Both the position numbers and the translations under genes were made by a program. Below, piece after piece: positions 2,614-63,277 of a DNA stretch of 64,000 bases (positions are counted from its first letter, which is position 1; every line of letters starts with the position of its first letter). Below the pieces are notes generated by a model. The model saw only the letters and a list, made by a program, of their open reading frames with translations, did no database searches and was not told the origin of the DNA. Origin of the DNA: Hemiscyllium ocellatum (taxonomy: Eukaryota); assembly GCF_020745735.1 (NCBI RefSeq), contig NC_083404.1, positions 11,904,001 to 11,968,000 of the forward strand. The letters are read 5' to 3'.

Positions 2614-2939
2614 AATTACTCAAGAAATTCAAAAAAATCCAGAGAATTAAAATGGTAGTCCCTCCAACATCTTCCAGAAACTAAAGGATCACCTCAGGAA
2701 ACAGCAAGTTTATAACAGCAACACTTTAAATTGAATTTATCTTAGCAAGCTCTGAAAGTTTTGCTTTAATATATGTTGGCTACCTTCCTATCCTATTTCT
2801 CCATGTAACTTCTCTTTCTTAGCATAGTCATACAAGTAGATCTTTAAAGACTAAAAGTGGTCAATATTTCCAGTTTGAAAATCTTCAAACCTGTTCAATT
2901 CTTTCTGAATTTTTAAAACGTGTTAGTAGCTAGCCAGAA

Positions 2940-3803
2940 GAAAGTGAGGACTGCAGATGCTGAAGATCAAAGTCGAGAGCATGGTGCTGGAAAACCACAG
3001 CCGGTCAGGCAGCATCCGAGGAGCAGAAGAATCGACATTTTGGGCATAAGCCCTCCATCAGGAATCAGGCTTGTGGGTCGGGGCTGACAGATAAATGTGA
3101 GGGGGTTGGAGTTGGGGGGGAGGTAGCTGGGAAAGTGATAGGTGAATAAAGGTGAAGGAGAAGGTGATAGGTCAGAGGGAGCACTGATGGACAGGTCCAG
3201 AGGGCGGGGCCGAGTTGGAGACTTGGGACTGGGATAACGTTGGGGGAGGAGATAGGAGGAAGCTGTAGAAATCCACATTTATCCCATGTGGTTGCAGGGT
3301 CCCAAGTCAGAATAGGAGGCGTGCCTCCTCCAGGTGTTGGTGGTAACGGTTTGGCAATGGAGGACACCCAGGACCTGCATGTCCTTGACGGAGTGGGAGA
3401 GGGAGTCGAAGTGTTCAGCCACAGGATGGTGGGGTTGATGGATGCAGGTGTCCCAGAGATGTTTTCTGAAATGATCCGCTATAGATCAGAGCTGAAAATG
3501 TGTTGCTGGTTAAAGCACAGCAGGTTAGGCAGCATCCAAGGAACAGGAAATTCGACGTTTCAGGCCAGAGCTCTTCATCAGGAATGAGGAGAGTGTGCCA
3601 GGCAGGCTAAGATAAAAGGTAAGGAGGAGGGACTTGGGGGAGGGGCGATGGAGATGTGATAGGTGGAAGGAGGTCAAGGTGAGGGTGATAGGCTGGAGTG
3701 GGGTGGGGGCGGAGAGGTCCGGAAGAAGATTGCAGGTTAGGAGGGCGGTGCTGAGTTCAAGGGAATCGACTGAGACAAGGTGGGGGGAGGGGAACTGGAG
3801 AAA
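2940..3803 (-). mobile_element. Two tandem 3' fragments of Penelope-like element family A (pLTR plus endonuclease C-terminus)
   Basis: Homologous to 57186-57700; hammerhead-like motifs at ~3029-3065 (mutated) and 3550-3585. Confidence 0.8.
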
Positions 3804-16377: not shown

Positions 16378-16602
<225 letters not shown>

Positions 16603-18087
16603 TCAATAATAATTTGCATTCAATTTATTTAATTACATAATTAAGAGAATTGTACTACAGGAATCTGTTGTCTGCTGTCTACACCTAGTCGAATCCACCC
16701 AGGGTGACTAGCTCCTTTGTCACATGAATGGACAAAATGGATCACACCCCATAAAGAGGGACTAATATTTACTATTTGAATATCATTCCCCACGCAGGAG
16801 AATACCTGCATCTTACTAACTCAATATTAACCTTACACATCTGTAACCCTACACATCTGCACTTCTTGCAGCAATCCAGTTCTCTTGTAGATTCAAATTT
16901 TCTTCTTATCTCAAAGAATCACAGAACTATTACAATGCACAAAGACACTCAGGTCTGCACCAGCTCTGTGAATACCATTCTTCTACCTTTGATCCTTTTA
17001 TAATAACACTTTATCTAAGACAATAAGTTGACAATAATCATATTTTTACATATAAGTACACATAATTAACAAAATGTCACACTTAAGAATCAAATAAATC
17101 CAATCATAATAATCCGTTTTTCCACTACCTCCCTATTCACAACACAGAAAATGCAGATTGGTTGACTACATATAGTGTCAGTTTGTTTCTTTTAAGAAAG
17201 AAATATGTAATTGAATGAGATGTGGCTCAAGTGTTCACAAGATGGATATCTTGAATGAGCAGTTTGTCTTATAGGTTGTCAGATAGGTTGAACAGTCCGG
17301 GCTTGGTTACACTGGCATTTAGAAGATGGGTGAGTTGATTGAAGTATTTAAACTCTTGAATGTTATTGACAAGGTGAATACAGAAATATTTTTTCCTCTT
17401 GTAAATAAGCAAGAGGCACTGTTTACAAACTGGGATTGCTCTTTTAGCACAGAGGTGTGAAGACAATTTTTCTTACATAAGTTGGAGACACTTTGGAACT
17501 CCCTTACAAGGTGGGGTCATTGAATATCTTAAGGTGAAATGTGCTATTTGTTAGCTAAGGGAATGGAAAATTGGAATTTAAAAGACAAACAGTTCAACAC
17601 ACTAATAACTAGCAGATAAGGCTAAAAAGGGGCCAAATGGCTTACTTCTGTTTCTAATTCAAACGTTAAGTCTGCAAGCATGTCACCAGACTTCCTTTTA
17701 ATTTTATATATTCCATTCATACCCTTGGTCTCCTGCAGTGTTCCAACAAAATTCACAACAAGCTTAAGCAACAGTATTTACATTTGTTTGGTTAGGTGAT
17801 CTGCGGTCTTCATGACAACAATTTAGAGCCTTAATCCTAGTCCCTTTCTTTGCAGGTGAGAGTTTTAGTTTCTTTTTGCTTTCATCGTCGCAGCTGCTGT
17901 TCATCATTTCACCATTCGCATCTCAGCAAACAAGTTTCTGTCTGTACATGTCTTATTACCATTGCCCTATACCAAATTTTTAATGTAATATTTCCCAAGT
18001 TCCATTCTATCAATTTTCTTTTCTTATTGGCTTGAAACCTACTAAATTTGATTGCAAAAATACAAGTCTTGCAAGAATGGTAGAAGG

Positions 18088-18214
18088 AGAAAGTGAGGTC
18101 TGCAGATGCTGGAGATTAGAGCTGAAAACGTGTTGCTGGAAAAGTGCAGCAGGTCAGGCAGCATCCAAGGAACAGGAGATTCGACGTTTCGGGCATAAGC
18201 CCTTCTTCAGGAAT
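18088..18214 (-). mobile_element. Solo Penelope family A terminal-repeat unit with 13-bp TSD (GAATGGTAGAAGG)
   Basis: Matches 57186-57296; direct repeats at 18075-18087 and 18211-18223. Confidence 0.85.
18179..18214 (-). ncRNA. Minimal type-I hammerhead ribozyme motif, intact core
   Basis: AUUC-CUGAAGA-A-GGGC(UUAU)GCCC-GAAA-C-GUC-GAAU; stem I AUUC/GAAU, palindromic ACGU helix III. Confidence 0.75.
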
Positions 18215-19904
18215 GGTAGAAGGTATTGGTAAAACCACTGCTAGAGTACTGTGTATAGTTTTAGTTTTCTTACTTAATGAATGCTGATAATTGTAACAAA
18301 AGTCATTCAAAGAAGCTTCACCAGGCTGATTTCTGGAACAAAGGTGTTATCTAATGAACAAAAATTGCACAGGCTGGGCATATTCTCATTTGTGTTAAGA
18401 ATGAGAAACATATTATTAAAACATTAAAGAGGCTTGACAGCATAGTTACTTAAGATCGTGAAGATGAATCATACTACATTCAAAACACTAACTATTTCTC
18501 TCACCAGAGATGCTGTCAGACCTGTTGAGTTTCTCCAACACATGCAGTATTTTGATTTCAAATGCCAAGAAGATACTTCCCCTTGTGGGGGATCTAATAA
18601 CTGGGGTAACAAATAGATTGGCATTTGTGAAAAAAGATTAGGAATTTCTTCTTTCTGAGTCATTAATCTTTGGAATGCTCTTTCAGAGGAAGATTGGAGA
18701 CTGGATCAGTAAATGTATTTCAAGGCTGCGTAACAGATTTTTGATATGGGAGTCAAGCAAGTAGTCAAGCAAGTGCAGTTTGATTCACCATCAGATCAGT
18801 CATGAACTATGGACAATATCCGTATGCAAAACAGCCATTACTGCTAGGTTGAAATCATGAAATTCCCTTGCTACCAGCACTACGGATGTTCCTGCACCCC
18901 AAGACAAAACTATAGGCAGCACACAAACCAGATAACTCTGGAAGGCAAACCAGCCCACCTTGCAATGGACAGCCCTATCTGTTTATCAGACTATCATTAA
19001 AAATGGTGTCTGACTTTATTTCAATATAGTTAGCAGTTCAATATGATTTCTGTTCCTTTGCTGCACCTTGGGCTGTTCAATTATTAACTGACAATTCAAG
19101 TAAAATCATCAATAAATAAATACTCATGCAGGATAGAGTTGACAACTACTTTTAGTTAGCAGTACATGAAGAACTAGTAATAGACATTTTCCTAACAAGT
19201 GTGTGGTAAACTACCAGTAGGCTGGCCAGTCATTTACACTGGACTTCATGCGGTTTTTAATCATCAACTTGCAAAGAAAAAAAACTGTTCCATGACAATC
19301 CCAACATATTCCTGGCTAGTCTGTGAAGTGTTATGTCTTACCTTTACTCTGCTTATCCATCAAATATACATGCTATATTCATTGGTTCAGTCAACAAAGA
19401 CTGGATTTTATTCTTCTTGTTTTTGTTCAAAAGCCTTTATACCCTCACCCCTCCATATCTCTGGTCTTCTTTAGCACTGCTTCACATCACCTATGATATC
19501 TGAGACCAATCGATTCTGCTCATATCCAGCATCTGCAGCCCTCACTTTCTCCCTCCGGATTCCGTCCTCTTCGGCTTTCTTGATTATAGAAGTTTCATCA
19601 CTAATGGCCATGCCTTCAGCTGCCTAGTCCTCAGCTCTGGATTTCCTTTCCTAAACCTCTCTGACTCCCCTTGAGGTGCTGCTTAAAAACCAACTTTTTG
19701 ACCAAGCATTTGGCCATTTGCAATGATATCACCTGAAGTAACTCGACCTCTAATTTTGCTTTAAATAAACACTAAGCACTTTAGGACATTTATACTAATA
19801 CACCATATAAGTTTTTATCGTGTTCTAATGATAATGTTTGGTATTACAAAACCAAAACCTAGCCTGTGTTGGAGACCATGAAACTTCTTTCCATGAAAAA
19901 TGTT

Positions 19905-20270
19905 TATGTTACTGGATTAGTAATCCAGAAGCCCAGAATAATGATCCAGAAACATGTTCAAATCCAATCACATGTGCCTGAGGAATTTAAATTCAATTAT
20001 TTCTATCTGGAATTTAAAAAAAACTAGCAATAGTGGCCATTAAATAGCAGATTGTGATGAAACTCCCAAGACGTTCATCAATATCCTTTCAAAAGGATGA
20101 TCTGCCATCTTTACTACTCTAAGCCCTCTGCAATGTGTGCTACAGCCTTTTGAACTGGCTAAGCAGGTCGCTCAGTTATATTCAAACATCTCACCACTTT
20201 CTCAAGGGCAATTAAGAGAGCTAATAAATGCTGATCTTGCCAATGATACATGGACCCTCAAATAAATTTT
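19905..20270 (+). mobile_element. SacSINE1/Deu-domain-like SINE (other copies ~9370-9600 on -, 52055-52410, 54840-55230, 62765-63057 on +)
   Basis: Shared GTTCAAATCC..GGAATTTAAATTCAA..TCACTAATG.CCTT..GGGCAATTAGGG..ATAAATGCTG blocks between copies; family name from recall. Confidence 0.5.
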
Positions 20271-20670
20271 AAAACACTCAGATGGCAAGAATGGAAACTT
20301 ATGACCGTAAAAGATAGTTGAAAAGAAAACAAGTTGCATCAAACGAGCTAGAGAAGCATAAAAGAAAAAGGAACAGCAGTATATGCTGATGGCATTTAGG
20401 GCAAGTTCACGTGGGACAATAGAAAGCCTTATACAGTGCTTTTCCAGGAGCAGACATCTCAAAGTGCTCTGAACTGTAGTCACTATCTTAACTTAGTAAT
20501 GGTAGCAAACAGCATTCTGAAAATTACCCGTAGTTGGAAATATCATGAGTTAGCGTAGTGGTAAGAATACCAGAAAGATGAAAAGCTACAATAATAAAAA
20601 TTGCTTGCATAAAATTCGAGCATCCATAATATCAAGCTAAACCAGTACTGACAAGTTTAAATAATATTAC

Positions 20671-22794: not shown

Positions 22795-23720
22795 TTCAGA
22801 AGGCAAATGCAATGTTAGCATTTATTTTAAGACTGCGAGAATGCAAATCTAGGAATATATTACAGTGCTGAAAATGTGTTGCTGGAAAAGTGCAGCAGTC
22901 AGGCAGCATCCAAGGAGCAGGAGAATCGACGTTTCGGGCATGAGCCCTTTCAGGAATGAGGAAAGTGTGTCCAGCAGGCTAAGATAAAAGGTAGGGAGGA
23001 GGGGCGTTGGAAATGCGATAGGTGGAAGGAGGTCAAGGTGAGGTTGATAGGCTGGAGTGGGGGTGGGGCGGAGAGGTCAGGAAGAAGATTGCAGGTTAGG
23101 AAGGTGGTGCTGAGTTTGAGGGATTTGACTTGACAAGGTGGGGGAAGGGGAAATGAGGAAACTGGAGAAATCTAAGTTCATCCCTTGTGGTTGGAGATAT
23201 ATTACAACACCTAAATAAGAGTCTGGTCAAATGCATTTGGAACACTGAGCAGTTTTGGGTCCCATATCCATGGAAGCATGTGTTGGCTTTGGAGGGAGTC
23301 CAGAGCATGTTTACAAGAATGGCTTGATTTAGGTGGAGCAGTTGAAAACTCAGAGTCTGTACTCAATGGAGTTTAGAAGAATGAGGGGGAATCGGATTGA
23401 AACTTTCTGGAGATGGAGAAAATTTTGCCACATAGGAGACAGCGAACCTCAGAAGAAAGAGCCAACCCTTTAGAACTGAGATAAGGAGGAATTTCAGCCA
23501 GAGCATGGTGAATCTGATGAACTCATTGACACAGAAGCCTGTGAAGGCAAAGTCAATGAGTATATTTAAGACAGAAATACATAGGTTCTTCATTAGTAAA
23601 GGGATCAAAGATTATGGGGAGAAGGCAGGAGAATGAGGTTGAGAAACATATCAGGCATGATCAAATTGCAGAGCAGGCTCGATTGGCTGAATAGTCTAAT
23701 CCTACTCCGATGTCTTATGT
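22795..23720 (+). mobile_element. CR1-like LINE 3' remnant (split by the Penelope fragment)
   Basis: AAGGCAAATGCAATGTTAGCATT, CAGTTTTGG, TTTAGAAGAATGAGGGGG blocks and a CR1-type 3' tail. Confidence 0.7.
22865..23196 (-). mobile_element. Penelope family A 3' fragment inserted into a CR1 remnant, 10-bp TSD ATATATTACA
   Basis: Homologous to 57218-57530; TSD at 22855-22864 and 23197-23206; hammerhead core carries a deletion. Confidence 0.8.
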
Positions 23721-24087: not shown

Positions 24088-24825
24088 TCCCCCTGTCCCT
24101 CTATGATCTCACTGAATAGCAAGAGACAAGAAAATTGCAGATGCTGGAATCTAAAATAGACAAGCAGGAGGATAGAACTAAACAAGCCAGGCAGCATCAG
24201 GAGGTGGAGAATTCAACGTGTCAAGCATAACCCTTCTTCAGGCAAATGGTGACTTCTCCATTTCCTAATACTGCCTTACTTGTTATGTTCTTCCAGCCTT
24301 CTGTTTGTCTACTTATTGAATAGCAAAGCAATCTAAAGGAGCCAAGTGGTCAATTCTGGCTCCCACTTCATATGGGCAATTGCTCCCTAGTGACCCACAG
24401 CTGGAGGCTTTGCAACTGAACAATTTGTTTATAATGCGTAACAACTGCAGTTAAAATAACCCTCCACAAGGATGCAATCTTCTGACTCTAAATTGCTGTC
24501 GTACATATAATTTACCAAGAATATAGATAATCCTTTTGGTATGTTACTATATTGGGAAGATGCTGAATAAAAGATTACTTCTACAGAAGATGAACATAAT
24601 CAATGAGTAAAGAACATTATATAAGTTTATGGTGACATTTATTCTTCCATAACAAATGGAGAAAACCCAAGAACTGTCAGGAAATCAGAAACAAAACACA
24701 AGTTGCTGGAAAAAGTCAGCAGGTCTGACAGCAGCACAGAAGGGTCACTTGATGCAAAACATTGACTCTGCTTTCTCTCCAAAGATGATGCCAGACTTTG
24801 TCCCAGAACATGTGCTTTTATTTAG

Positions 24826-25307
24826 TTAAAAATCACACAACACCACGTTATAGTCCAACAGGTTTAATTGGAAGCACACTAGTGGGTGACACAGTGGTTA
24901 GCACTGCTGCCTCACAGCGCCAGAGACCCAGGTTCAATTCCCAACTCAGGCGACTGACTGTGTGGAGTCTCCCCGTGTCTGCGTGGGTTTCCTCCGGGTG
25001 CTCCGGTTTCCTCCCACAGTCCAATGAGGTGAATTGGCTATGCTAAATTACACGTAGTGTTAGGTAAGGGGTAAATGTAGGGGTATGGGTGGGTTGCGCT
25101 TCGGTATGGACTTGTAGGGCCAAAGGTGTTTCCACACTAAGTAATCTAATCTAATCTTTTGAAGCACTGCTCCTTCATCAACCACCTGATGGAGGAGCGG
25201 CGCTCTGAAAGCTAGTGTGCTTCCAATTAAACTTATTGGATTATAACCTAGTGTTGTGTGATTTTTAACTTTGTACACCTCAGTCCAACACTGGCATCTC
25301 CAAGTCA
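24826..25307 (+). mobile_element. Palindromic non-autonomous Penelope family B unit (inverted pLTR plus pLTR plus tail), 13-bp TSD, interrupted by a SINE
   Basis: Arms TTAAAAATCACACAACACC... and ...GTGTTGTGTGATTTTTAAC; TSD TGCTTTTATTTAG at 24813-24825 and 25308-25320. Confidence 0.85.
24884..25156 (+). mobile_element. HE1-like V-SINE nested in the palindromic unit
   Basis: Head, core and (TCTAA)n tail with internal deletions. Confidence 0.85.
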
Positions 25308-25448
25308 TGCTTTTATTTAGTCCTTGGTATCGGACGTCAGCACAAATGTTTCCACCATTAAGTGAGTATGCAGAACAATTAAATTTCTAACTTCATAATC
25401 ATAATTGAAACACACTGTTAGTCCAGTAGGTTGAAATGTTTCTCAAAC

Positions 25449-48222: not shown

Positions 48223-50935
48223 CTAGAATCCCTAGTGTGGAAACAGCCTGCTGGCCCAAAAAGTCCACACCGACCCTCTGAAGAGTAACCCACCCAGATC
48301 CATTCCCCCTATATTTACCCCTGACAAACGTACCTAACATACACATCCTGGAACACTCTGGGCACACCATCAAGGCAGCAGATAAAGGGGGCAAAGTGGT
48401 AATCTGGCGCACTGACCTCTACACCGCTGAAGCCCAACCCGCGCTGGCCTATTACCCGCCCTCGAGATCTTCATTTCCAACTGCCGCCGGGACATTAACC
48501 GCCTCAACCTGTTTACCCCCTCCCCACCCCCACCCCCACTCCAACCCCTCACCCTCACAACCCGCAGCCCTCCAATCCCAACCTCACCGTCAAGCCAGCA
48601 GATAAAGGGGGCGCAGTGGTAGTCTGGCGCACTGACCTCTACACCGCTGAAGCCAAACGCCAACTCGAGGACACCTCTTCCTACCATGACCCAACCCCAC
48701 CATCACCAAACTATCATCTCCCAGACCATACAGAACCTCATCACCTCAGGAGATCTCCCACCCACAGCTTCCAACCTCTTAGTCCGGGAACCCCACACTG
48801 CCCGGTCCTACCTCCTTCCCAAGATCCACAAGCCTGACCACCCTGGCCGACCCATTGTCTCAGCATGCTCCTGCCCCACTGAACTCATCTCTACCTACCT
48901 CAACATTGTTCTATCCCCCCCCCCAGTCCAGGAACTCCCCACATACATTCGAGACACCACCCATACCCTCCACCTCCTCCAAGACTTCTGTTTCCCCGGC
49001 CCCCAACACCTCATCTTCACCATGGATATCCAATCCCTCTACACCTCCATCTGCCATGACCAGGGCCTCCAAGCCCTCCGTTTTTTTTTCTCTCCCGACG
49101 TCCCCAACAGTACCCTTCCACCGACACACTCATTCGTTTGGATGAACTTGTCCTCACCCTTAACAATTTCTCCTTTGAATCCTCCCACTTCCTCCAGACC
49201 AAAGGGGTAGCCATTGGCACACGTACGGGCTCCAGTTATGCCTGTCTCTTTGTTGGCTACGTAGAACAGTCGATCTTCCGTAATTACACCGGCACCACTC
49301 CCCACCTCTTCCTCTGCTACATTGATGACTGCAATGGCGCCACCTCATGCTCCCGCGAGGAGGTTGAGCAATTCATCAACTTCACCAACACATTCCACCC
49401 TGACCTTAAATTTACCTGGACCATCTCTGACACCTCCCTCTCCTTCCTGGACCTCTCCATCTCCATTAATGATGACCGACTTGACAATGACATTTTTATC
49501 AAACCCACTGACTCCCACAGCTACCTGGATTACACCTCTACCCACCCTACCTCTTGCAAAAATGCCATTCCGTATTCCCAATTCCTCGGCCTCTGCCGTA
49601 TCTGCTCCCAGGAGGACCAGTTCCACCACAGAACACACCAGATGGCCTCCTTCTTTAGAGACCGCAATTTCTATTCCCACATGGTTAAAGATGCCCTCCG
49701 ATGCATCCCGTCCACATCCCGCACCTCCGACCTCAGACCCACCCCTCCAACCGTAACAAGGACAGAACGCCCCTGGTGCTCACCTTCCACCCTACCAACC
49801 TTCGCATAAACCAAATCATCCGCCGACATTTCCGCCACCTCCAAAAAGACCCTACCACCAGGGAGATATTTCCCTGCCCACCCCTTTCCGCCTTCCACAA
49901 AGACCGTGCTCTCCGTGACTACCTGGTCAGGTGCACGTCCCCCTACAACCCACCTTCCCATCCTGGCACTTTGCCCTGCCACCGCCGGAACTGTAAAACC
50001 TGTGCCCACACCTCCTCCCTCACCTCCATCCAAGGCCCTAAAGGAGCCTTCCACATCCATCAAAGTTTACCTGCACATCCACTAATATCATTTATTGCAT
50101 CCGTTGCTCCAGATGCGGTCTCCTCTACATTGGGGAGACTGGACACCTCCTAGCAGAGCGCTTTAGGGAACATCTCCGGGACACCAGCACCAATCAACCA
50201 CACCACACTGTGGCCCAACATACTCCCTCTCCCACTCTGCCGAGGACAAGGGGGTCCTGGGCCTCCTTCACCGCTGCTCCCTCACCACTAGACGCCTGGA
50301 GGAAGAACGCCTCATCTTTCGCCTCGGAACACTTCAACCCCAGGGCATCAATGGGGACTTCAACAGTTTCCTCATTTCCCCTTTCCCCACCTCACCCTAG
50401 TTCCAAACTTCCAGCTCAGCACTGTCCCCATGATTTGTCCTACCTGCCTATCTATTTTTCCACCTGTCCACTCCACCCTCCTCCCTGACCTATCACCTTC
50501 ATCCCCTCCCCCACTCACCTATTGTACTCCACGCTACTTTCTCCCTACCTCCACTCCCACCCTCCTCTAGTTTATCTCTCCACACTTCAGGCTCTCTGTC
50601 TTTATTCCTGATGAAGGGCTTTTGCCCGAAAGGTTGATTTTGCTGCTCCTTGGATGCTGCCTGAACTGCTGTGCTCTTCCAGCACCACTAATCCAAAATC
50701 TGGTTTCGAGCATCGGCAGTCATTGTTTTTACCACCGCAATGAAGCATAGCCAATTCACCTAAGCCCACATCTTTTGGATTGTGGGAGGAGACCAGAGCA
50801 CCTGGAGGAAACCCATGCAGACACAAGGAGCATGTGCAAACTCCACACAGACAGTTGCCCGAGGTGGGAATCAAACCCAGATCCCTGACGCTGTGAGGCA
50901 GCAGTGCTAACCACTGAGCCACCGTGCTGCCCCCT
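48223..50935 (-). mobile_element. HE1-like V-SINE split in two (48223-48364 and 50737-50935) by a Penelope insertion
   Basis: Tail half ends ...ACACTCTGGGCA; head half resumes GCAATGAAGCATAGCCAATTCACC. Confidence 0.8.
48365..50736 (+). mobile_element. Penelope-like element family A, 5'-truncated and frameshifted: RT plus GIY-YIG plus pLTR
   Basis: ADKGG, YLLPKIHK..PGRPIVS, MDIQSLYT, QTKGVAIG, YIDDC, FLD, KPTDSHSYL, PCHRRNCKTCAH, YIGET; pLTR with hammerhead motif at 50604-50640. Confidence 0.93.
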
Positions 50936-53700: not shown

Positions 53701-55043
53701 ATTTCAGCATAATTTGTGATTTATCAGCTATTGAAGCAGTCCATGTTCAAATGAAACAAAATCTGGACAGTATCCATGCCTGAGGTGACAAGTGCCAAAT
53801 AACAAGAATACCACTTACGCCAGGCTATGACCATCTCCAGTACAAGACAATCTAACCACTACCTTGACATTCAATGGCATTACCGTCACTTAATCCTCCA
53901 CTATCAACATCTTGAGGGTTACCATTGACCAGAAACTCAACTGAACCAATAGACTGGGAGCAAGAGCAGATCAGAGACTAGGAATACTGCAGTGAGTAAC
54001 TCACCTCCTGACTCCGAAAGCCTGTTCACAAGTCAGGAGTGTGACAGAGCACTTTGCCACTTGCCTGGATGATTGCAGCTCCAACAACATTCAAGAAGCC
54101 TGACACCATCCAGCACAAAGTAGCCCACTTCATTGGCATCATACCCACAAATATGCACTCATTTCATCTATAAGATGCACTGCAGCAATTCACCAAGGCC
54201 CCTTTCGACAGCACCTTTCAAACCCGCAACCAACTCGAAGGAGAAAGGCAGCAGATACGTGGGAACGCCACCTCCTGGAAGTTCCCCTCCAAGCCACTTT
54301 CAGCGCTGATCTGGAAACATACTGCCATTCCTTCCGTGTATTTTGGTCAAAATTCAGCAATCCCTACCCTAACAACATTGTGGGTCTACCTGCAGCACAT
54401 AGATGCAGTGGTTCAAGAACGCAATTCACTATTACCTTTTTCAAGGGCAACTAGGGATAGTTCAGCAGCAATGCTCATGTCTCATGAGTGAATTTAAAAA
54501 AAATAGGTGCAAGTATTTTTCTTGACCTTGCTATTGTCAACAAAGTTACTGAAGATGAAACTACATTGACAGAACAGGAAAGATCATGTCTAAAATTTTA
54601 TGGTAGAATTGGAACTTTGATCATTTGAGAACTTCCTTTGAGCAAGACAAGGGGAAAAGGGGAAGATAGTATTGCCTTTGTTACTTGCCACCCTTCTGAA
54701 GAAAATGTTAAGATCAAACTAAAGAAATGAAAACACAAACTCTCTTTATACTCTTTTTATAACTTTATTCTCTTTTGCTGATCAAAGAGGAAAGAAAGAC
54801 AAAAAGCTGCTAAACCTTTGCAGGTATGTGGTGTTATTCTGATTATGTCATTGGCTAGTAATCCGGATCCCCAGGCTGCACGCATACATTCAAAGGGCAG
54901 ATGACATGTGAATTTAATAAAATCTTTGAAGAGAAAGTTAACCTAATGGCGACCACAAACCATTGTTGATTATCATTAGGGGAAACAATTTGGTTCACTA
55001 ATGCCCTTTAGGAAGGAGACTCTGCCACCCTTACAAGTCCTGG

Positions 55044-55137
55044 GCTGAAAGTATGCTGCTGGAAAAGCGCAGCAGGTCGGGCAGCATCCAAGGAGTAGGA
55101 GAATTGACGTTTCGGGCATAAGCTCTTCTTCAGGAAT
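55044..55137 (-). mobile_element. Solo Penelope family A terminal unit with a hammerhead motif (55101-55137), inside a Deu-like SINE
   Basis: ATTCCTGAAGAAGAGCTTATGCCCGAAACGTC on the minus strand; one stem II mismatch. Confidence 0.75.
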
Positions 55138-56507
55138 GACCTCCTTACATGTCCCTCCAGATTTAAATACGCTGCAGGCAGTTAGGGGTGGGCAATAAAT
55201 GCCAGCAGTGATGCTCATGTTCTATACGAGAATTTATTTTAAATTAGGATAGTGATACTTCAGTTTTAAAAGCTGTCAAATCCTAAGAACTACCTACGAA
55301 TAACGCAATCTTTGGGGGACAAGAGGGTTAAAATAGCAGAATAAAACAAAACCTGCAGATGTTGAGGATCAGAAATGAAAGGCAGACATTGCAGGACAAA
55401 TTCTGCACAGATACTACCAGATCTGCTGAAAAAGCAGAATTCACATTTCAAGCCCCGTGACCCTTCAGAGCAGATGCTGTCAGACCTGCTGAATTTCTGC
55501 ACCATTTTATTTTTAAAATGTCAGATGCTTGCAAATATTGATGTGAGTACAGCTGCAATTATACTTTGGAGCCAAGAATGACTTTCACTCCAGTGTTATC
55601 CTATGGTGACTGAATAGCTGGATCGACACCTCTTGCTGTTTGAGGTGGGTGGGATGCTGAGGTTTGGGCATGATCTTTCTGTTATATGTGCTTTACCTCC
55701 ATCTGGGCCTGTTAGAGGCACTTAAAATGATTGGCATCTTTTGTGCACACTTCTTTTCCAATTTGGGTGGACTTAGTTGGGACTATTTTGATAAGGCAGA
55801 GAGGAGTTTACATTTTATTTTTCACTAGGATTTGAAGGATATACTAAAAGCCATTCCTCTGCCCTCCTGGTAATTGTTTGCTGTGACAAAGCTATTGACA
55901 GTTTGTTTTTGAAGTCTTTGTCTATAGGCTAGAGACATGTGACCTGCCCATTGCAACTGACTGAATATAAATAGTGTCTTGAAACTGGCCTGAGAGGGGC
56001 TACTAATACTGGAGTGCCTATTCTGCCAGTTATTTTGCAGAGGCATCACCAGAGCTTTTCTCAAGACATCGAAGTTTCTGTTGTTCGTGATCAAGAGCTC
56101 CAATGCATCCTCAGTGCTGGTAGCACTACTGCCATGTAAACCATGACCCTTGTGTCTGGCTTGAGGTCTTTGGCAACTAACATTGTTCATCAAACAGTCA
56201 AGACTGCACTGGTAAACTGGAAGTGCTGTTGAATTTCAATATTCTTGAAACGAGACAACCTATTATAAAGTTTCTTTCTTTCCTGTTACCCATTTTGTGA
56301 ATGCTAATGTCTAGGTAAGTTGTTTTACTTCCCCCCCAGCTTTACATCAGATTAAATCAATACTAAGTACAAATTGCACTAGTGTTTTAGAATGCACCAA
56401 AAAACAATTGTATGGTACTTTAATTGGCCAGTTTGTGGTAAACAATTGGGAAAACATTGATGCTGAATTCTAATTTAATGTAATTTAATTAATTTAATAA
56501 AATTCTA

Positions 56508-57185: not shown

Positions 57186-59054
57186 AAAAAGTGAGGTCTG
57201 CAGATGCTGGAGATCAGAGCTGAAAATGTGTTGCTGGTTAAAGCATCCAAGGAACAGGAAATTCGACGTTTCGGGCCAGAGCCCTTCATCAGGAATGAGG
57301 AGAGGGTGCCAGGCAGGCTAAGATAAAAGGTAGGGAAAGGGACTTGGGGGAGGGGCGATGGAGATGTGATAGGTGGAAGGAGGTCAAGGTGAGGGTGATA
57401 GGGCGGAGAGGTCAGGAAGAAGATTGCAGGTTAGGAGGACGGTGCTGAGTTGAGGGAACTGACTGAGACAAGGCGGGGGGAAAATGAGGAAACTGGAGAA
57501 ATCTGAGTTCATTCCTTGTGATTGGAGGGTTCCCAGGCAGAAGATGAGGCGCTCTTCCTCCAACTGTTGTGTTGTTATGTTCTGCCGATGGAGGAGTCCA
57601 AGGACCTGCATGTCCTCGGTGGAGTGGGAGGGAGAGTTAAAGTGTTGAGCCACGGGATGGTTGGGTTGGTTTGTCTGGGCGTCCCAGAAGTGTTCCCTGA
57701 AGCGTTCCGCAAGTAGGCGGCCCGTCTCCCCAATATAGAGGAGGCCACATCGGGTGCAGCGGATGCAATAGATGATGTGTGTGGAGGTGCAGGTGAATTT
57801 GTGGCGGATTTGGAAGGATCCCTAGGGGCCTTGGAGAGAAGTAAGGGAGGAGGTGTGGGCGCAAGTTTTACATTTCCTGCGGTTGCAGGAGAAGGTGCCG
57901 GGAGTGGAGGTTGGGTTGGTGGGGGTGTGGACCTGACGAGGGAGTCACGAAGGGAGTGGTCTTTGCGGAATGCTGATAGGGGAGGGGAGGGGAATATATC
58001 CCTAGTGGTGGGGTCCGTTTGGAGGTGGCGGAAATGATGGCGGATGATATGCTGTATATGGAGGTTGGTGGGGTGGTAGGTGAGAACCAGTGGGGTTCTG
58101 TCTTGGTGGCGGTTGGAGGAGCGGGGCTCAAGGGCAGAGGAGCGGGAAGTGGAGGAGATGCGGTGGAGGGCATCGTCGATCACGTCTGGGGGGAATCTGC
58201 GGTCCTTGAAGAAGGAGGCCATCTGGGCTGTCAGGTATTGGAACTGGTCCTCCTGGGAGCAGATGCGGCGGAGACGAAGGAATTGGGAATATGGGATGGC
58301 GTTTTTACAGGGGGCAGGGTGGGAAGAGGTGTAGTCCAGGTAGCTGTGGGAGTCAGTCGGTTTATAGTAGATGTCTGTGTTGAGTCGGTCGCCCGAGATA
58401 GAAATGGAAAGGTCTAGGAAGGGGAGGGAGGAGTCTGAGACAGTCCAGGTGAATTTGAGGTCCGGATGGAAGGTGTTGGTAAAGTTGATGAACTGTTCAA
58501 CTTCCTCGTGGGAGCACGAGGCAGCGCCGATACAGTCATCGATGTAGCGGAGGAAAAGGTGGGGTGTGGTGCCAGTGTAGTTGCGGAAGATGGACTGTTC
58601 CACATATCCTACGAAGAGACAGGCATAGCTGGGGCCCATGCGGGTGCCCATGGCAACTCCTTTAGTTTGGAGGAAGTGGGAGGATTGAAAAGAGAAGTTA
58701 TTCAGGGCGAGGACCAGTTCAGTCAGTCGAAAGAGGGTGTCAGTGGAAGGGTACTGGTTGGTACGGCGGGAAAGGAAGAAGCGGAGGGCTTTGAGCCCTT
58801 CGTGACGGGGGATGGAGGTGTACAGGGACTGGATGTCCATCATGAAGATAAGGCGTTGGGGACCGGGGAAGCGCAAATCCTGGAGGAGGTGGAGGGCGTG
58901 GGTGGTGTCCCGAACGTAGGTGGGGAGTTCTTCGACTAAAGGGGACAGAACCGTGTCGAGGTACGCGGAGATGAGTTCGGTGGGGCAGGAGCAGGCTGAG
59001 ACAATGGGTCGGCCGGGGCAGTCAGGTTTGTGGATTTTGGGCAGGAGGTAGAAG
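57186..59054 (-). mobile_element. Penelope-like element family A, young, 5'-truncated; RT uninterrupted, frameshift before the GIY-YIG domain
   Basis: Open frame from FYLLPKIHKPD through QTKGVAMGTRMGPSYA, RYIDDC, KPTDSHSYL; IYCIRC..LYIGET in a shifted frame; complete pLTR. Confidence 0.95.
57261..57296 (-). ncRNA. Minimal type-I hammerhead ribozyme motif, intact core
   Basis: AUUC-CUGAUGA-A-GGGC(UCUG)GCCC-GAAA-C-GUC-GAAU; predicted cleavage between 57265 and 57264. Confidence 0.78.
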
Positions 59055-59678
59055 CCTCCTGTGACAATATTGTGACAATCTGAGCAGTCTTTTCAATAAA
59101 TCTCTAGATTTACATGGTCCAATATAATGCCTATAAGAGCTGATAATACATCAAACCTTTCTGAGCAGAATGTTTAACCAATGCCATCCATTGTTATTGT
59201 CTGGGTGGAAAGCGCTTCTGCTGAGGATGGCCTTTAGCAAACTTGTTTTCCTGCTATGTAAAGTAACACCATACACTAAAGTACATGCCACACAAGACCC
59301 TTGCAACAATCAGAAGATCTAATTCATAGCTTGGTTTCTGGAAGTGGAGAAGGAGCAAGCTCACTTGATATTGCTACTGAACCAAATAAATAATTAGATT
59401 AAGTTTTCACTAATTAGAGCAAGTGAAAAACTAAACATGCCTTTTCCTTTAACTGTATAAAAGGAGGAATTTAAGAGTTTTTTTTTGGAAATATCTGTTG
59501 TATAGAAAAACTAATCGATTTTCATTCTAAGATGCAGAATTTCATTGTTAATGCATTTCTAATGCTTAAAGGCAGGTACTCAATTGGACTCTATTCAATA
59601 AGTTTTACAATTTATTTGCCAAGGGTTCACATGGCAAAATTGTGTTAGTTTCAGCATCTACAGTCCTTACTTTCTCCT

Positions 59679-61745
59679 AACATCCTTGTAAATCTTTTCT
59701 GAACCCTTTCAAGTTTCACAACATCTTTCCAATAAGAAGGAGATCAGAATTACACGCATTTTTTGAACAGTGGCCTAACCAATGTCCTGTACAGCCTCAA
59801 CATGACCTCCCAACTCGTGTACTCAATATTCTTACCAATAAAGGAAAGCATACCAAAAACCCTCTTCACTATCCTATCTACCTTTTGACTCTAGTTTGAA
59901 GGAGCTATGAACCTGCACTCCAAGGTCTTTGTTCAGCAACACTCCCTAGGACCTTACCATTAAGTGTATAAATCCTGCTAAGACTTGCTTTCCCAATGCA
60001 CCTCACATTTATCTGAATTAAACTCCAACTGCCAGTTCTTAGCCCATTGGCCCATCTTGTCAAGATCCTGTTGTAGTCTGAGGTACCCTTCTTCGCTGTC
60101 CACTAAACCTCCAATTTAGGTGTCATCCGCAAACTTACTAACTTAAAACACTATGCTCTCATCCAAATCATTTGTATAAATGACGAAAAGTAGAGGACTC
60201 AGCACCAATCCTTGTGGCACTTCACTGGTCACAGGCTTCCAGTCTGAAAAACAACCCTCTACCACCATCTTCTGTCTTCTACCTTTTGAGCCAGTTCTGT
60301 ATCCAAATGGCTAGTTCTCCCTGTATTCCGTGAGATCTAATTTTGCTAACCAGTCTCCCTCCCATGGGGAACCTTGTTGAACGCCTTACTCAAGTCCATA
60401 TAGATCATAAATACCATTCTGCCTTCATCAATCCTCTTTGTTACTTCAAAAAAACTCAACGGTCTACCTTGTCCATGCTGACCAAGTTTCCCAAAATAAA
60501 CTAATCCCGCTTGCCTGCGTTTGGCCCATGTCCCTCAAAACCTTTCCTATTCACGTACCTGTCCAAATGACTTTTTTAAATGTTGTGACTGTACCTGTAC
60601 CTGTACCTGTACCTGTACTTGCAACTACCATTCCCTCTGGCAGTTTATTTCAGAAACAAACCACAGTGTGGAAAACGTTGCCCCTCAGGACCCTTCTAAA
60701 TCTCTCTCCTCTTATCTTTAAAAATATGCCTCCCCACTTTTGATCTCCCCTACCTTAGGGAAAATACTTTTTACCGTTCACCCTGTCTATGCCCCTCATG
60801 ATTTTATAAACTTCCATAAGGTTGCCCCTTAACCTGCCACTGAAAAAAAGACCCAGCCTCTCTTTAATTCAAATCCTCCAGTTCTGGCAACATCCTGGTT
60901 AATCTTTTTTTAATCCTTACTATAGCAGGGCGACCAGAACTGTACAGATGACATTGGTGAGACCACCTTTTACTGCACTGTAAAACCTCAACAAGACGTC
61001 CCAACTCCTATACTCCATGGTCTGAGCAATAAAGACAAGCACACTAAATGACCTCTTAACCAACCTGTCTATCTGTGACCTAACTTTTAAAGAACTATTT
61101 ACTGAACCCAAGGTCTGTGTTTGACAACACTATCTAGGACCCGACTATTAGCTGAATAAATTATGCCCTTGTTTGCTTTATCAAAATGTCATACCTTGCA
61201 TTATTCCGAATTAAACTCCATCTGTCACTCCTCAGTCCATTTACCCAATTGATCAAGATCTCTTTGTAATTTTAGATGACCACCTTCACTGTCAACTATA
61301 CCACCAATTTTGGTGTCATTCACACACCTACCAACCCATGCCTCCTATATTCTCATTCAAATTGTTTGTATAAATGATAAAAAAAAACGGCAGACCTAAT
61401 ACTGATTCCAGTGGAACACCACTGGTCACAAGCCTCCAGTCTGAAAAAAAACAACCCTCCATCACCACCCTCTGTCTCCTATCGTCAAGTATTTTTCTAC
61501 CCAATTAACAAGCATATCCTGAATCCCATGTGATCTAACTTTTCCAATTCAGTCTACCATGCAGAACCTTGCCAAAGGCTTTACTAAAGTCCATGTTGAC
61601 AATGTCTACCACTCTGCCCTCATCAAACATTTTGGTTAAGTCCTCCAAAACTCAATCTGGTTTGAGCAACGTGATGTCCCACAGCCATGTTAACTATCCC
61701 TAATCGGTCCTTGCCTTTACAAATTAATGTAAATTGCCTCTATCT
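59679..61745 (-). mobile_element. Two tandem CR1/HER1-like LINE fragments (59679-60460 and 60461-61745)
   Basis: First fragment begins with sequence nearly identical to 34610-34990; both carry GVPQG/KFADDTK-type RT blocks; a second 3' tail begins at ~60461. Confidence 0.82.
60589..60618 (+). repeat. (CTGTAC)5 tandem repeat
   Basis: Directly visible. Confidence 0.9.
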
Positions 61746-63058
61746 ACACTAGGGATTCTGTGACAAGAAGCAAAGGTTTTCTTTCTGTGGAATTAGAATT
61801 GTGGAAAGTAAACTTATGAGACTAACTGCATTGAGCAAGAAAAACAGGTACACAGAAGTATAAATTGGTGCATGTTGCCAATTGTACCTCAAAGCTGTCC
61901 CGTGGAAGTGTATTCTGACTGCCTCTGGCAAATGGACTCCTTTCTTGTTGCTTTAACAGTACAGAAATGTAAGCAATCTGAACTATTAATAAGCTGTTTC
62001 TTATAAATCCTAACATGACTGACTTCTTGGTATTGCTGGGAATACTAGAAAAACAATTGAAGCTAATGAAATCCAGGTGGCTTTTTGAAAATGACGTCTG
62101 TTTAAACATTGTTGCACTAATGTGGAGTGACACTACAGCTGAGATCAGCTTGCTTTTTAAAAATTGATCCCTAATCTTCCTGGTAAAGATGTAACAGGAA
62201 AATTAATTACGAGAGGTGCAAAGCAGCAAAATGAATCTTCTCACTTTTGTGAATTAATCTGCTGTAAGCAGAAACTGGAGTGCTTTGTGTAACAACAGCC
62301 GAAGGTCTCTGAACTAGGATCAGGAGCCTTGTTTGCTTTAACACATTTTGTGTATTGGAGGGCCCAAGGCCACATACATCCAATAAATTGCTTTCAGTTT
62401 ATACATTTCTGCTAGTTATTCATATCTTCTATTTTGTTAGTGCACTGATCCTTTCAAAAGCAATTTACGCAGTAAATATAAATTTTTGATTTACAGCTCC
62501 GTTCTGAAGGTAGGCCCAAGAAGCTAGATTAAAACAAAGAAAAGCACAGGACTTGATCAATTGTAACAAAAAAAATGAACTACAGATGCAAAAACAGAAA
62601 TTGTTGGAAAAATTCTAGCAGCATCTGGGAAAGAAAGCAGAATTAATGTTTCGGGTTTGGTCACCCTTCTTCAGGTGTCAATTTCTATTTTTTAAGTTGA
62701 TTTGGGCATCCACTGTGCATCAAACACTTGTATATCAAGTATATTATTGCCTGGGTCTTTGGATTGTTCTGGGGACCTGAGCTCAAATCCAGCCACAGCA
62801 GCTGGTGGAATTGGAATTTGAATTCAATAAAAATCTCGAATTAAGAGTCTAATGATAAGCATGGGACCACTGACAATTGTCAAAAAACCCATCTTGTTCA
62901 CTAATGCCCTGTTAAGGAAGGAAACGGCTACCCTTGATTGGTCTGACCTACATGTGACCTTAGACCCATAGCAGTGTGTTTGACTCTCCACTGTTCTTTG
63001 GGCAACTAGGGAATGAGCAATAAATGCTGGCCTAGCCAGCAATGTTCACATCCATAAA

Positions 63059-63277
63059 GTTAAAAATCACACAACACCAGGTTTAGTCCAACAGGTTTGT
63101 TTAGAAGTACTAGCTTTCGGAGCACTGCTCTTTCATCAGGCAGCTGTAGAGCAGGATTCAGCTCCACAGCTCCTAATGAAGGAGTCATACTCCGAAAGCT
63201 AGTACTTCCGATAACCTGGTGTTGTATTATTTTTAACTTTTTGTCCGCCTCAGTCCAACACAGGCACTTCAACATCA
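63059..63277 (+). mobile_element. Palindromic non-autonomous Penelope family B unit with a hammerhead motif in each arm, 13-bp TSD
   Basis: Inverted arms 63059-63150 and 63160-63237 plus 40-nt tail; TSD TCACATCCATAAA at 63046-63058 and 63278-63290. Confidence 0.87.

What the first reader, a model, noticed from the sequence alone, without database searches (positions are those of the whole stretch)
18075..18223. Intact hammerhead motif in the sense orientation inside RPL7 intron 5, on a ~125-bp solo unit
Seen: a unit consisting only of a hammerhead plus the Penelope family A tail, with a 13-bp TSD (GAATGGTAGAAGG). Its 5' end coincides with hammerhead stem I, and the GAAT overlaps the TSD as microhomology. 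All core nucleotides are present (CUGAAGA, GAAA, GUC; predicted cut between 18183 and 18182). It is on the RPL7 transcribed strand. Known: minimal hammerheads with a palindromic helix III are thought to need dimerisation to cleave well. Inference: a highly transcribed housekeeping intron may generate ribozyme-cut intron fragments or act as a source transcript for this mini-element. The copy at 55044-55137 ends at the same CAGGAAT boundary.
Basis: partly seen in the sequence, partly recalled or inferred. Interest (0 to 1): 0.72.

Follow-up and report, generated by a model that had tools for sequence, protein, structure and literature searches.

The report
Penelope retrotransposon stub in RPL7 intron
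This is a 123-127-base retro-copied tail end of a Penelope-like jumping gene, carrying that element's usual minimal hammerhead ribozyme motif, inserted in the sense direction in the last intron of ribosomal protein gene RPL7; it is real but an ordinary product of a known element, and nothing here shows that it cuts the intron.

Summary
At 18088-18210 (minus strand) lies a 123-bp insert flanked by an exact 13-bp duplication. It consists of a complete minimal type-I hammerhead motif, a conserved spacer and a 33-nt tail. It aligns to the 3' end of long copies in the same window that encode a reverse transcriptase and a GIY-YIG nuclease, so it is a stub of a Penelope-like element (PLE). It lies in RPL7 intron 5 on the transcribed strand.

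The motif has every feature published for PLE minimal hammerheads. These show no detectable cleavage as single motifs and low activity as dimers or with the element's protein. No Rfam hammerhead model matches. Helix I is 4 bp and predicted to form rarely.

The "cut intron fragments" and "source transcript" ideas have no support here.

The 5'-boundary point is supported. Short copies and hairpin arms in this window end within about 13 nt of the hammerhead's 5' edge, whereas long copies end hundreds of bases upstream.

The 3' ends fall into tail-bearing and tail-less classes, as the published two-start-site model expects.

The scan already reported the same stub population, and the same edge enrichment, on other pieces of this genome (s1-147033, s1-147081).

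Verdict: new member of a known kind, low interest.

The parts
18075..18087 (.). Target-site duplication, copy next to the element's 3' (tail) end
   Evidence: Exact 13-nt repeat GAATGGTAGAAGG. Such repeats are rare in the window.
18211..18223 (.). Target-site duplication, copy next to the element's 5' end. Positions 18211-18214 (ATTC on the minus strand) also serve as the hammerhead helix I 5' strand, giving 4-nt junction microhomology.
   Evidence: ATTC precedes CTGA in all family copies.
18088..18210 (-). 123-bp inserted stub of a Penelope-like element: hammerhead, spacer and tail
   Evidence: blastn and nhmmer alignment to the 3' ends of long copies, model positions 214-339 of 339. Alignment A1.
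18179..18214 (-). Minimal type-I hammerhead motif: AUUC / CUGAAGA / A / GGGC-UUAU-GCCC / GAAA / CGUC / GAAU
   Evidence: Helix II pairing probability is at least 0.87 and helix I at most 0.13. No Rfam hammerhead match.
18182..18183 (-). Predicted self-cleavage site, after C17 at 18183 and before G1.1 at 18182
   Evidence: Position follows from the motif. Cleavage itself is untested.
18121..18151 (-). Hairpin UGCUG/CAGCA followed by an AC-rich stretch and UUUUCAGC. The tail-less copies c22 and c55 end at UUUCAGC, the proximal 3' end.
   Evidence: Compared with the two reverse-transcription start sites in PMC11167929.
18088..18120 (-). 33-nt tail, the optional 3' extension. Its CAGCAUCU pairs with GGAUGCUG upstream in the centroid fold.
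   Evidence: A tail of 30-40 bp is described in PMC8557442 and PMC11167929.
16587..20670 (-). RPL7 intron 5, the host intron (4084 nt)
   Evidence: GT-AG exon model with a 242-aa open frame. Pfam L30_N and L30.
22866..23196 (-). c22: 5'-truncated, tail-less copy of the closest subfamily in RPL7 intron 2, sense strand, with 10-bp duplication TGTAATATAT. Its hammerhead box lacks 2 nt but GAAACGUC is kept.
55036..55139 (-). c55: second solo stub of the CTGAAGA/UUAU subfamily. Its 5' end is 2 nt upstream of ATTC. It is tail-less and flanked by GGACATGTAAGG / GGACTTGTAAGG.
57188..61300 (-). c57: long copy of the family. It carries a reverse-transcriptase frame, a C-terminal GIY-YIG nuclease preceded by C-X4-C-X2-C, about 200 nt of 3' UTR, the hammerhead and the tail.

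Best explanation
The unit is a retro-copy of only the last 123-127 nt of a Penelope-like element (PLE) that encodes its own endonuclease and has a Neptune-type linker motif. That segment is the element's minimal hammerhead, the spacer that holds the reverse-transcription start region, and the 33-nt tail.

Proposed insertion steps. Each is inferred from the anatomy and from the published mechanism:
1. The element's GIY-YIG nuclease nicked the plus strand after 18087.
2. Reverse transcription was primed there and began at the more distal of two internal start sites on the element RNA, so the tail was kept.
3. The cDNA ran to an RNA 5' end lying at or a few bases before the hammerhead.
4. It was joined to the other target end through the 4-nt ATTC microhomology.
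5. A second nick 13 nt away produced the duplication.

The hammerhead motif is a passenger of this event. It is now transcribed inside RPL7 pre-mRNA in the sense direction. It has no helix III of its own and only a 4-bp helix I. It is therefore expected to be almost inactive unless a second copy or the element's protein is present, and the insertion is most likely neutral for RPL7.

[quoted passage not shown] That could be a transcription start at the A of AUUC, or the edge of a protected RNA-protein particle. It is not the hammerhead's cut.
For: Insertion:
- Exact 13-bp duplication abutting both homology boundaries.

Family:
- The unit aligns end to end with the 3' terminus of long copies.
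- The upstream frame of those copies has RVT_1 at E 2.7e-6.
- It also has GIY-YIG at 25.4 bits, above Pfam's cut-off of 22.6, and a C-X4-C-X2-C linker.

3' ends:
- c18, c57, c03a and c50 carry the tail of about 33 nt.
- c22 (own 10-bp duplication) and c55 stop at UUUCAGC.
- This matches the two adjacent internal start sites and the optional 30-40-bp tail in PMC11167929 and PMC8557442.

Motif:
- CUGANGA, an unpaired base after A9, G10.1-C11.1, palindromic 15.2-16.2 and a 4-5-bp helix I are exactly the published PLE minimal hammerhead features (PMC4209133).

Low activity:
- Helix I pairing probability is at most 0.13 in the unit alone and with 50-300 nt of intron flank on each side.
- The ACGU intermolecular helix is worth only -1.7 to -3.1 kcal/mol.
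- The whole unit is no more structured than shuffles, z = -0.40.
- Published single motifs are inactive (PMC4209133).
- The Anolis element's hammerhead needs its protein and is dispensable for insertion in vitro (PMC11167929).

5' boundary:
- Stub and arm ends lie at -4..0 (c18), -6 (c55), about -1 (c62), about -7 (c24 long arm) and -2 to -13 (two family-B hairpins), relative to C3.
- Long copies end at about -220, -240, -414, -1800 and beyond -4000.
- By my reading, six of eleven insertion events end within a 14-nt span. The binomial P is 4e-7 against a uniform 450-nt null.
- TTTATCT is conserved about 31 nt upstream of the A of ATTC in five diverged long copies, and TCATTCC fits the initiator consensus YYANWYY.
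- In Drosophila virilis Penelope the mapped start site lies 46 nt plus a 75-nt intron upstream of the hammerhead (PMC2377424, PMC4209133).
Against: - The reverse-transcriptase match is below Pfam's gathering score (27.7 against 29.6), and the long copy is frameshifted. Clade assignment rests on one linker motif.
- The run-off-to-RNA-5'-end idea is inference. No transcript data exist here.
- The initiator consensus is loose, and TTTATCT is not a canonical TATA box.
- Several 5' ends, notably c62's, rest on weak duplications.
- Only one 64-kb window was available.
- All four stubs carry CUGAAGA, while four of five long copies carry CUGAUGA (Fisher P = 0.048). This leaves room for a separate stub-forming lineage.
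- Inactivity in the intron is predicted, not measured.
Confidence: 0.85

Rival explanations
1. The hammerhead is active in RPL7 pre-mRNA. It pairs through ACGU with a second sense copy in the same transcript (c22 or c24 in intron 2), or with element RNA, or is helped by the element's protein. It then cuts intron 5 at 18183/18182 and yields discrete intron fragments.
For: - The core, helix II and H17 are intact, as in only one other of nine family copies (c57).
- The strand is sense.
- c22 keeps GAAACGUC and lies on the same strand 4.7 kb upstream.
- Dimer-dependent cleavage is documented for related motifs (PMC4209133, PMC7229834).
- Protein-assisted cleavage is documented for the Anolis element (PMC11167929).
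Against: - The 4-bp intermolecular helix is very weak.
- Helix I is rarely formed.
- Single minimal motifs showed no cleavage, and dimers were poor under physiological Mg (PMC4209133).
- No RNA-seq ends were found at the cut site in Anolis (PMC11167929).
- Intron 2 would usually be spliced out before intron 5 is transcribed (inference).
- Intactness is unremarkable for a copy that is 88-92% identical to its nearest relatives.
Confidence: 0.08
2. The hammerhead-plus-tail unit is a self-propagating non-autonomous mini-element, like a SINE or a retrozyme, with a defined 5' end. Copies lying in highly transcribed introns such as this one act as its source genes.
For: - The 5' boundary recurs in c18, c55, c62 and the hairpin arms.
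- All four stubs share CUGAAGA, which lacks the AUG of CUGAUGA, against one of five long copies.
- The template needs only the segment downstream of the hammerhead (PMC11167929).
- PLE-derived non-autonomous hammerhead repeats are proposed in bioRxiv 10.64898/2026.07.22.740005.
Against: - The stub has no promoter of its own.
- A cDNA made from intron RNA would run on into RPL7 intron sequence, yet c55 and the other stubs have unrelated 5' flanks.
- The nearest relative of c18 (c22, 92% identity) is joined to nuclease-coding sequence and the 3' UTR, so the subfamily exists in long form.
- There is no tandem arrangement as in retrozymes.
Confidence: 0.1
3. The 5' end at stem I is a coincidence of random 5' truncation followed by microhomology joining. 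ATTC happened to match the target end.
For: - Heavy 5' truncation is the rule for PLEs (PMC8557442).
- The junction has 4 nt of microhomology, and 6 of 7 nt if ATTCYTG is counted.
Against: - Independent stubs and arms from at least three families end in the same 14-nt span although their target sequences are unrelated.
- An earlier follow-up on another piece of this genome reported the same enrichment (s1-147033). That note is a lead only.
Confidence: 0.1

Closest known systems
Minimal hammerhead ribozymes of metazoan Penelope-like elements (Cervera & De la Pena 2014, PMC4209133)
   Same: - CUGANGA and GAAA boxes
- an unpaired base between A9 and 10.1
- a G10.1-C11.1 pair
- no loop 3, with palindromic 15.2-16.2 (ACGU)
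- helix I of 4-5 bp
- location in the element's terminal repeat
- mostly found as single motifs in truncated copies, also as opposite-strand pairs 100-700 bp apart
   Different: Helix II is 4 bp here, against 7-8 bp in the Schistosoma families. The host is a shark-like genome that the paper does not describe. Nothing in kind differs.
Poseidon element of Anolis carolinensis, PAc (Frangieh et al. 2024, PMC11167929)
   Same: - a hammerhead a short distance upstream of two adjacent internal reverse-transcription start sites
- an optional 30-40-nt tail between those sites
- product length set by the RNA's 5' end
- both target strands can prime, which explains hairpin copies
- AT-containing nick sites (ATT lies next to both nicks here)
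   Different: In PAc the open frame starts in the hammerhead box. Here the AUG of CUGAUGA is followed by a stop after 17 codons in the intact-length copies (read), and c18 has CUGAAGA. The clade is probably Neptune-type, not Poseidon. No biochemistry exists for this family.
Non-LTR retrozymes of animals (PMC7229834; Li, Clavereau & Pollet 2026, bioRxiv 10.64898/2026.07.22.740005)
   Same: - short non-coding hammerhead-bearing units related to PLE terminal repeats
- dispersed monomers occur, 44% of them intronic in Xenopus tropicalis
- dimer-dependent cleavage
   Different: Retrozymes are tandem arrays with canonical type-I hammerheads and give circular RNAs. This is a single unit of 123-127 bp with its own duplication and a minimal hammerhead.
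Conserved intronic hammerheads of amniotes (De la Pena & Garcia-Robles 2010, EMBO Rep; Rfam HH9/HH10) and the intronic CPEB3 ribozyme (PMC10919898)
   Same: A self-cleaving motif in the sense strand of a host intron, where cleavage could compete with splicing.
   Different: Those are canonical, active as monomers and conserved across species. This motif matches no Rfam hammerhead model, lacks helix III, and is a recent transposon copy with an intact duplication.

Membership tests
PLE minimal hammerhead (min-HHR, PMC4209133) | Catalytic boxes CUGANGA and GAAA, with H at position 17 | tested here: met
   CUGAAGA at 18210-18204, GAAA at 18190-18187, C17 at 18183.
PLE minimal hammerhead (min-HHR, PMC4209133) | Unpaired nucleotide between A9 and 10.1, and a G10.1-C11.1 pair closing helix II | tested here: met
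   A at 18203. GGGC/GCCC has pairing probability 0.87-1.0 in all contexts. Other families in the window have GGGU/ACCC and GGAG/CUCC, which are compensatory changes.
PLE minimal hammerhead (min-HHR, PMC4209133) | No stable helix III; positions 15.2-16.2 palindromic so that two copies can share helix III | tested here: met
   A-C-G-U with no loop. The duplex is predicted at only -1.7 to -3.1 kcal/mol.
PLE minimal hammerhead (min-HHR, PMC4209133) | Short helix I (4-5 bp) | tested here: inconclusive
   AUUC/GAAU can pair and forms in the isolated 49-nt segment. Its probability is at most 0.13 in the unit or the intron context.
PLE minimal hammerhead (min-HHR, PMC4209133) | Self-cleavage of the RNA | not testable with these tools
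   Needs transcription and cleavage assays or RNA end mapping.
Rfam hammerhead families (Hammerhead_1, _II, _3, HH9, HH10) | Match to the covariance model | tested here: not met
   No match at gathering score in the window. No hammerhead match even at E up to 10 in 18000-18300. This is expected for a motif without helix III.
Endonuclease-bearing Penelope-like element | Reverse transcriptase followed by a C-terminal GIY-YIG nuclease in the family's long copies | tested here: met
   GIY-YIG at 25.4 bits against a cut-off of 22.6. RVT_1 at 27.7 bits, E 2.7e-6, just under the 29.6 cut-off. YIDDC and IIY...YIGET motifs are visible. The copy is frameshifted.
Endonuclease-bearing Penelope-like element | 5'-truncated insertions with variable duplications, an optional 30-40-bp tail, and partial tandems or inverted pairs | tested here: met
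   Duplications of 13 bp (c18) and 10 bp (c22), and about 12 bp with one mismatch (c55). Tail of 33 nt present or absent. Partial tandem c03b/c03a. Hairpins at 24154-24314, 24813-25320 and 63046-63290.
Neptune clade of PLEs | CX2-5CxxC motif in the linker between reverse transcriptase and nuclease (PMC8557442) | tested here: inconclusive
   C-NRRK-C-KT-C lies upstream of GIY-YIG in c57, and the same pattern occurs in c50. No phylogeny was made.
Non-LTR retrozyme | Head-to-tail tandem of two or more hammerhead-bearing monomers | tested here: not met
   There is a single unit. The nearest family copies are 4.7 kb away.

The most novel reading that the evidence does not exclude
The 5' ends of these stubs are a genomic record of the ends of PLE template RNAs. 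Most mark an RNA 5' end at the hammerhead's 5' edge, either a transcription start at the A of AUUC or the edge of a protected RNA-protein particle. Rarer arms, such as the short arm of the hairpin at 24250-24314, begin at the predicted cut site and would be fossils of hammerhead cleavage in vivo. If so, a genome-wide count of the two end classes would measure how often the ribozyme cuts during retrotransposition, which is the open question about PLE hammerheads. Intronic sense copies such as this one could then be tested as natural reporters.
Probability: 0.25. Interest if true: 0.6.

Novelty: new member of a known kind. Interest (0 to 1): 0.25.

Why it matters
As a single locus it matters little. 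It is one more truncated Penelope-like insertion carrying the family's usual minimal hammerhead, in a neutral position of a housekeeping intron.

Its small value is as a clean, datable example. It has an exact duplication, an intact core and a known transcription context, in a population whose 5' ends pile up at the ribozyme's edge. That pile-up, together with the two classes of 3' end, agrees with the 2024 in vitro model of internal initiation. It could help show what the still unexplained PLE hammerhead does.

Tried and rejected
- **Rfam:** a scan of the whole window at gathering score and of 18000-18300 at E up to 10 gave no hammerhead match. The four weak matches (LPR10, MIR5286, CRISPR-DR52, Vax2os1_2) are chance.
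- **Homodimer fold:** the minimum-energy fold of the 49-nt segment gave a domain-swapped duplex, not the helix III dimer. The true hammerhead dimer is not nestable in dot-bracket form, so only the ACGU duplex energy was evaluated.
- **Longer 5' end from blastn:** blastn extended the c57 match 10 nt into the duplication (18215-18224). I rejected this as pyrimidine-rich chance similarity (4 of 10 matches), because the same 13 nt are repeated exactly at the other flank.
- **Shared ACCATT:** c18 and c24 share ACCATT upstream of CCTGAAGA. I considered it as evidence for a longer element 5' end and rejected it. In c24 the first bases belong to the inverted arm, leaving only CC shared.
- **Open frame from the CUGAUGA AUG, as in PAc:** it stops after 17 codons in c03b- and c22-type sequence, read by eye. 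It is open in c57 only because of a 17-nt deletion.
- **Offspring of c18:** none was found in the window. c55, c22 and c24 lack its private bases and its flank.
- **Older fragments:** nhmmer found fragments starting at model positions 235-265 (6829, 10442, 38575, 55347, 18508, 24700). They have no inverted partners except c24, and their starts are too degraded to use.
- **Not run:** large protein or collection searches, because the contig collections hold bacterial, archaeal, viral and metagenome DNA and the answer did not depend on them.
Full report
**What is there**

On the plus strand, GAATGGTAGAAGG occurs at 18075-18087 and again at 18211-18223. The repeat runs to 16 nt with one mismatch. 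In the whole 64-kb window only four exact direct repeats of 13 nt or more lie 60-400 nt apart. One of the others flanks a different Penelope hairpin at 63046/63278. The duplication is therefore not chance.

The 123 bp between the two copies read on the minus strand as follows:
- CUGAAGA, an unpaired A, GGGC-UUAU-GCCC, GAAA, CGUC
- GAAUCUCC...
- a hairpin UGCUG/CAGCA, then an AC-rich stretch ending in UUUUCAGC
- a 33-nt tail ending in CUCACUUUCU

The four bases before CUGAAGA are AUUC at 18214-18211. They belong to the duplication, but they also precede the box in every other copy of the family. The junction is therefore ambiguous by 4 nt, which is microhomology.

**Gene context**

Six GT-AG exons on the minus strand give a 242-aa open frame. 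They lie at 26057-26044, 25551-25449, 22602-22448, 22274-22137, 20780-20671 and 16586-16378. Pfam finds Ribosomal_L30_N (67 bits) and Ribosomal_L30 (63 bits). A pyrimidine tract lies at the 5' end. This is RPL7 (uL30).

The unit lies in intron 5 (16587-20670), 2457 nt from the donor and 1502 nt from the acceptor, on the transcribed strand.

**What family it belongs to**

blastn and a profile of the long copies align the unit end to end with the 3' terminus of seven other copies in the window. It covers model positions 214-339 of 339.

The longest copy, c57 (57188 to at least 61300, minus strand), has the layout of an endonuclease-bearing Penelope-like element, probably Neptune-type (PMC8557442):
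- a reverse-transcriptase frame (RVT_1, E 2.7e-6, 27.7 bits, just under Pfam's cut-off)
- after a frameshift, C-X4-C-X2-C followed by IIY...YIGET
- a GIY-YIG match at 25.4 bits against a 22.6 cut-off
- about 200 nt of pyrimidine-rich 3' UTR, then the hammerhead and the tail

**The 3' ends**

c18, c57, c03a and c50 carry the tail. c22 has its own 10-bp duplication TGTAATATAT. c55 is flanked by GGACATGTAAGG / GGACTTGTAAGG. Both of these copies stop at UUUCAGC, 33 nt earlier.

Frangieh et al. (PMC11167929) showed in vitro that an Anolis PLE starts reverse transcription at two adjacent internal sites. They showed that the optional 30-40-bp genomic tail is the sequence between those sites. The two classes seen here fit that model.

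**The hammerhead**

The motif has the four features that Cervera and De la Pena list for PLE minimal hammerheads, beyond the boxes they searched for (PMC4209133):
- a base between A9 and 10.1
- a G10.1-C11.1 pair
- palindromic 15.2-16.2 with no loop 3
- a short helix I

Other PLE families in this window have GGGU/ACCC and GGAG/CUCC in helix II, which are compensatory changes. Rfam's hammerhead models do not match the motif, even at E up to 10. That is expected without helix III.

Predicted folding is weak:
- Helix II forms with probability 0.87-1.0.
- Helix I forms with probability at most 0.13, both alone and with 50-300 nt of intron flank on each side.
- The shared ACGU helix of a dimer is worth only -1.7 to -3.1 kcal/mol.
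- The unit as a whole folds no better than shuffles, z = -0.40.

Of the nine family copies that still have the region, two (c18 and c57) keep core and helices intact. This is unremarkable for a copy 88-92% identical to its nearest relatives.

**Does it cut the RPL7 intron, or act as a source?**

Nothing here says so.

Published tests argue against strong activity:
- Single minimal motifs showed no detectable cleavage, and dimers showed low activity (PMC4209133).
- The Anolis hammerhead cut only with the element's protein present.
- That hammerhead was dispensable for insertion in vitro.
- It left no RNA-seq ends at the cut site (PMC11167929).

A partner does exist in the same pre-mRNA. c22 in intron 2 is sense and keeps GAAACGUC, although its own box lacks 2 nt. 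It lies 4.7 kb upstream, in an intron that would normally be removed first.

As a source, intron RNA does contain the start region. But cDNA would continue into RPL7 intron sequence, and no other copy in the window carries that flank or c18's private bases. A hammerhead cut would also separate the ribozyme core from the tail. It therefore cannot produce a copy that begins at stem I.

**The 5' boundary**

Relative to C3 of the box, the ends are:

| Copy | 5' end |
|---|---|
| c18 | -4 to 0 |
| c55 | -6 |
| c62 (older stub at 62560-62675, weak duplication) | about -1 |
| c24 hairpin, long arm | about -7 |
| Family-B hairpin at 24813-25320, both arms | -2 to -3 |
| Family-B hairpin at 63046-63290, both arms | -10 to -13 |
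| The five long copies | about -220, -240, -414, -1800, beyond -4000 |

By my reading, six of eleven insertion events end in one 14-nt span. The binomial P is 4e-7 against a uniform 450-nt null, and 1.5e-3 if only the three family-A solo stubs are counted among eight events.

In vitro, product length follows the RNA's 5' end (PMC11167929). The simplest reading is that the template RNA often begins there. Three observations are consistent with this, though none proves it:
- TTTATCT is conserved about 31 nt upstream of the A of AUUC in five diverged long copies, while the sequence between varies.
- TCATTCC fits the initiator consensus YYANWYY.
- In Drosophila virilis Penelope the mapped start lies 46 nt plus a 75-nt intron upstream of the hammerhead (PMC2377424, PMC4209133).

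A protected RNA-protein edge is an alternative. The short arm of the c24 hairpin begins within a base of the predicted cut site. It is a single, degraded example.

All four stubs carry CUGAAGA, while four of five long copies carry CUGAUGA (Fisher P = 0.048). A stub-prone lineage therefore cannot be excluded.

**Comparison and verdict**

The locus is a member of a known kind, a 5'-short PLE insertion with the family's minimal hammerhead.
- Dispersed single motifs in truncated PLEs, opposite-strand pairs, optional tails and intronic monomers are all described (PMC4209133, PMC8557442, PMC11167929, bioRxiv 10.64898/2026.07.22.740005).
- It is not a retrozyme, because it is not tandem.
- It is not a conserved intronic ribozyme of the HH9/HH10 type.
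- Earlier follow-ups of this scan reached the same reading on other pieces of this genome (s1-147081, s1-147182). One also reported the edge enrichment (s1-147033). I treated these as leads and re-derived the points on this window.

Interest is low for the locus and moderate for the population-level boundary signal.

Noticed in passing
window 24130-24314: Asymmetric hairpin PLE unit in RPL7 intron 2, with arms 24154-24215 and 24250-24314 about 74% complementary. The 34 nt between the arms are the hammerhead core of the long arm. The short arm begins within one base of the predicted hammerhead cut site, which could be a trace of in vivo cleavage.
   Followed up: partly
window 22866-23196: A 5'-truncated, tail-less PLE copy (c22) in RPL7 intron 2 on the sense strand, with 10-bp duplication TGTAATATAT. 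Its 5' end lies in the nuclease-coding region. Its hammerhead box lacks 2 nt, but GAAACGUC is intact.
   Followed up: yes
window 57296-57340, 3585-3630, 22957-23000, 3065-3110, 50560-50604: TTTATCT is conserved about 30-33 nt upstream of the A of ATTC in five diverged long copies, while the intervening sequence varies. TCATTCC fits the initiator consensus. Together they could be the element's promoter, with a start at hammerhead helix I.
   Followed up: partly
window 18103-18110 with 18159-18166, and the same boxes in other copies: The tail's CAGCAUCU pairs with the invariant GGAUGCUG just downstream of the hammerhead in the centroid fold. Tail-less copies cannot form this helix. No covariation was seen.
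   Followed up: no
window 2939-3803: Partial tandem of two diverged PLE fragments. c03b ends 10 nt into its tail at 3483 and is followed directly by c03a, which starts inside the GIY-YIG coding region and carries a full tail.
   Followed up: partly
window 24880-25150: A SINE-like, apparently tRNA-related repeat is inserted into the left arm of the family-B hairpin at 24813-25320, splitting its hammerhead.
   Followed up: no
window 48376-48654: Exact direct repeats of 17 and 32 nt lie 220 nt apart, indicating a local duplication of about 220 bp just upstream of the long plus-strand PLE copy c50.
   Followed up: no
whole window: Eight of nine family-A-like copies lie on the minus strand. All three in RPL7 introns (c18, c22, c24 long arm) are sense to the gene. 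This is unlike the usual antisense bias of retroelements in introns, but the sample is small.
   Followed up: no
window 19440-19560: A plus-strand, degraded PLE 3' fragment in RPL7 intron 5, antisense to the gene. It ends in ATCCAGCATCTGCAGCCCTCACTTTCTCC and appears to have an internal deletion between the helix I region and the tail.
   Followed up: no
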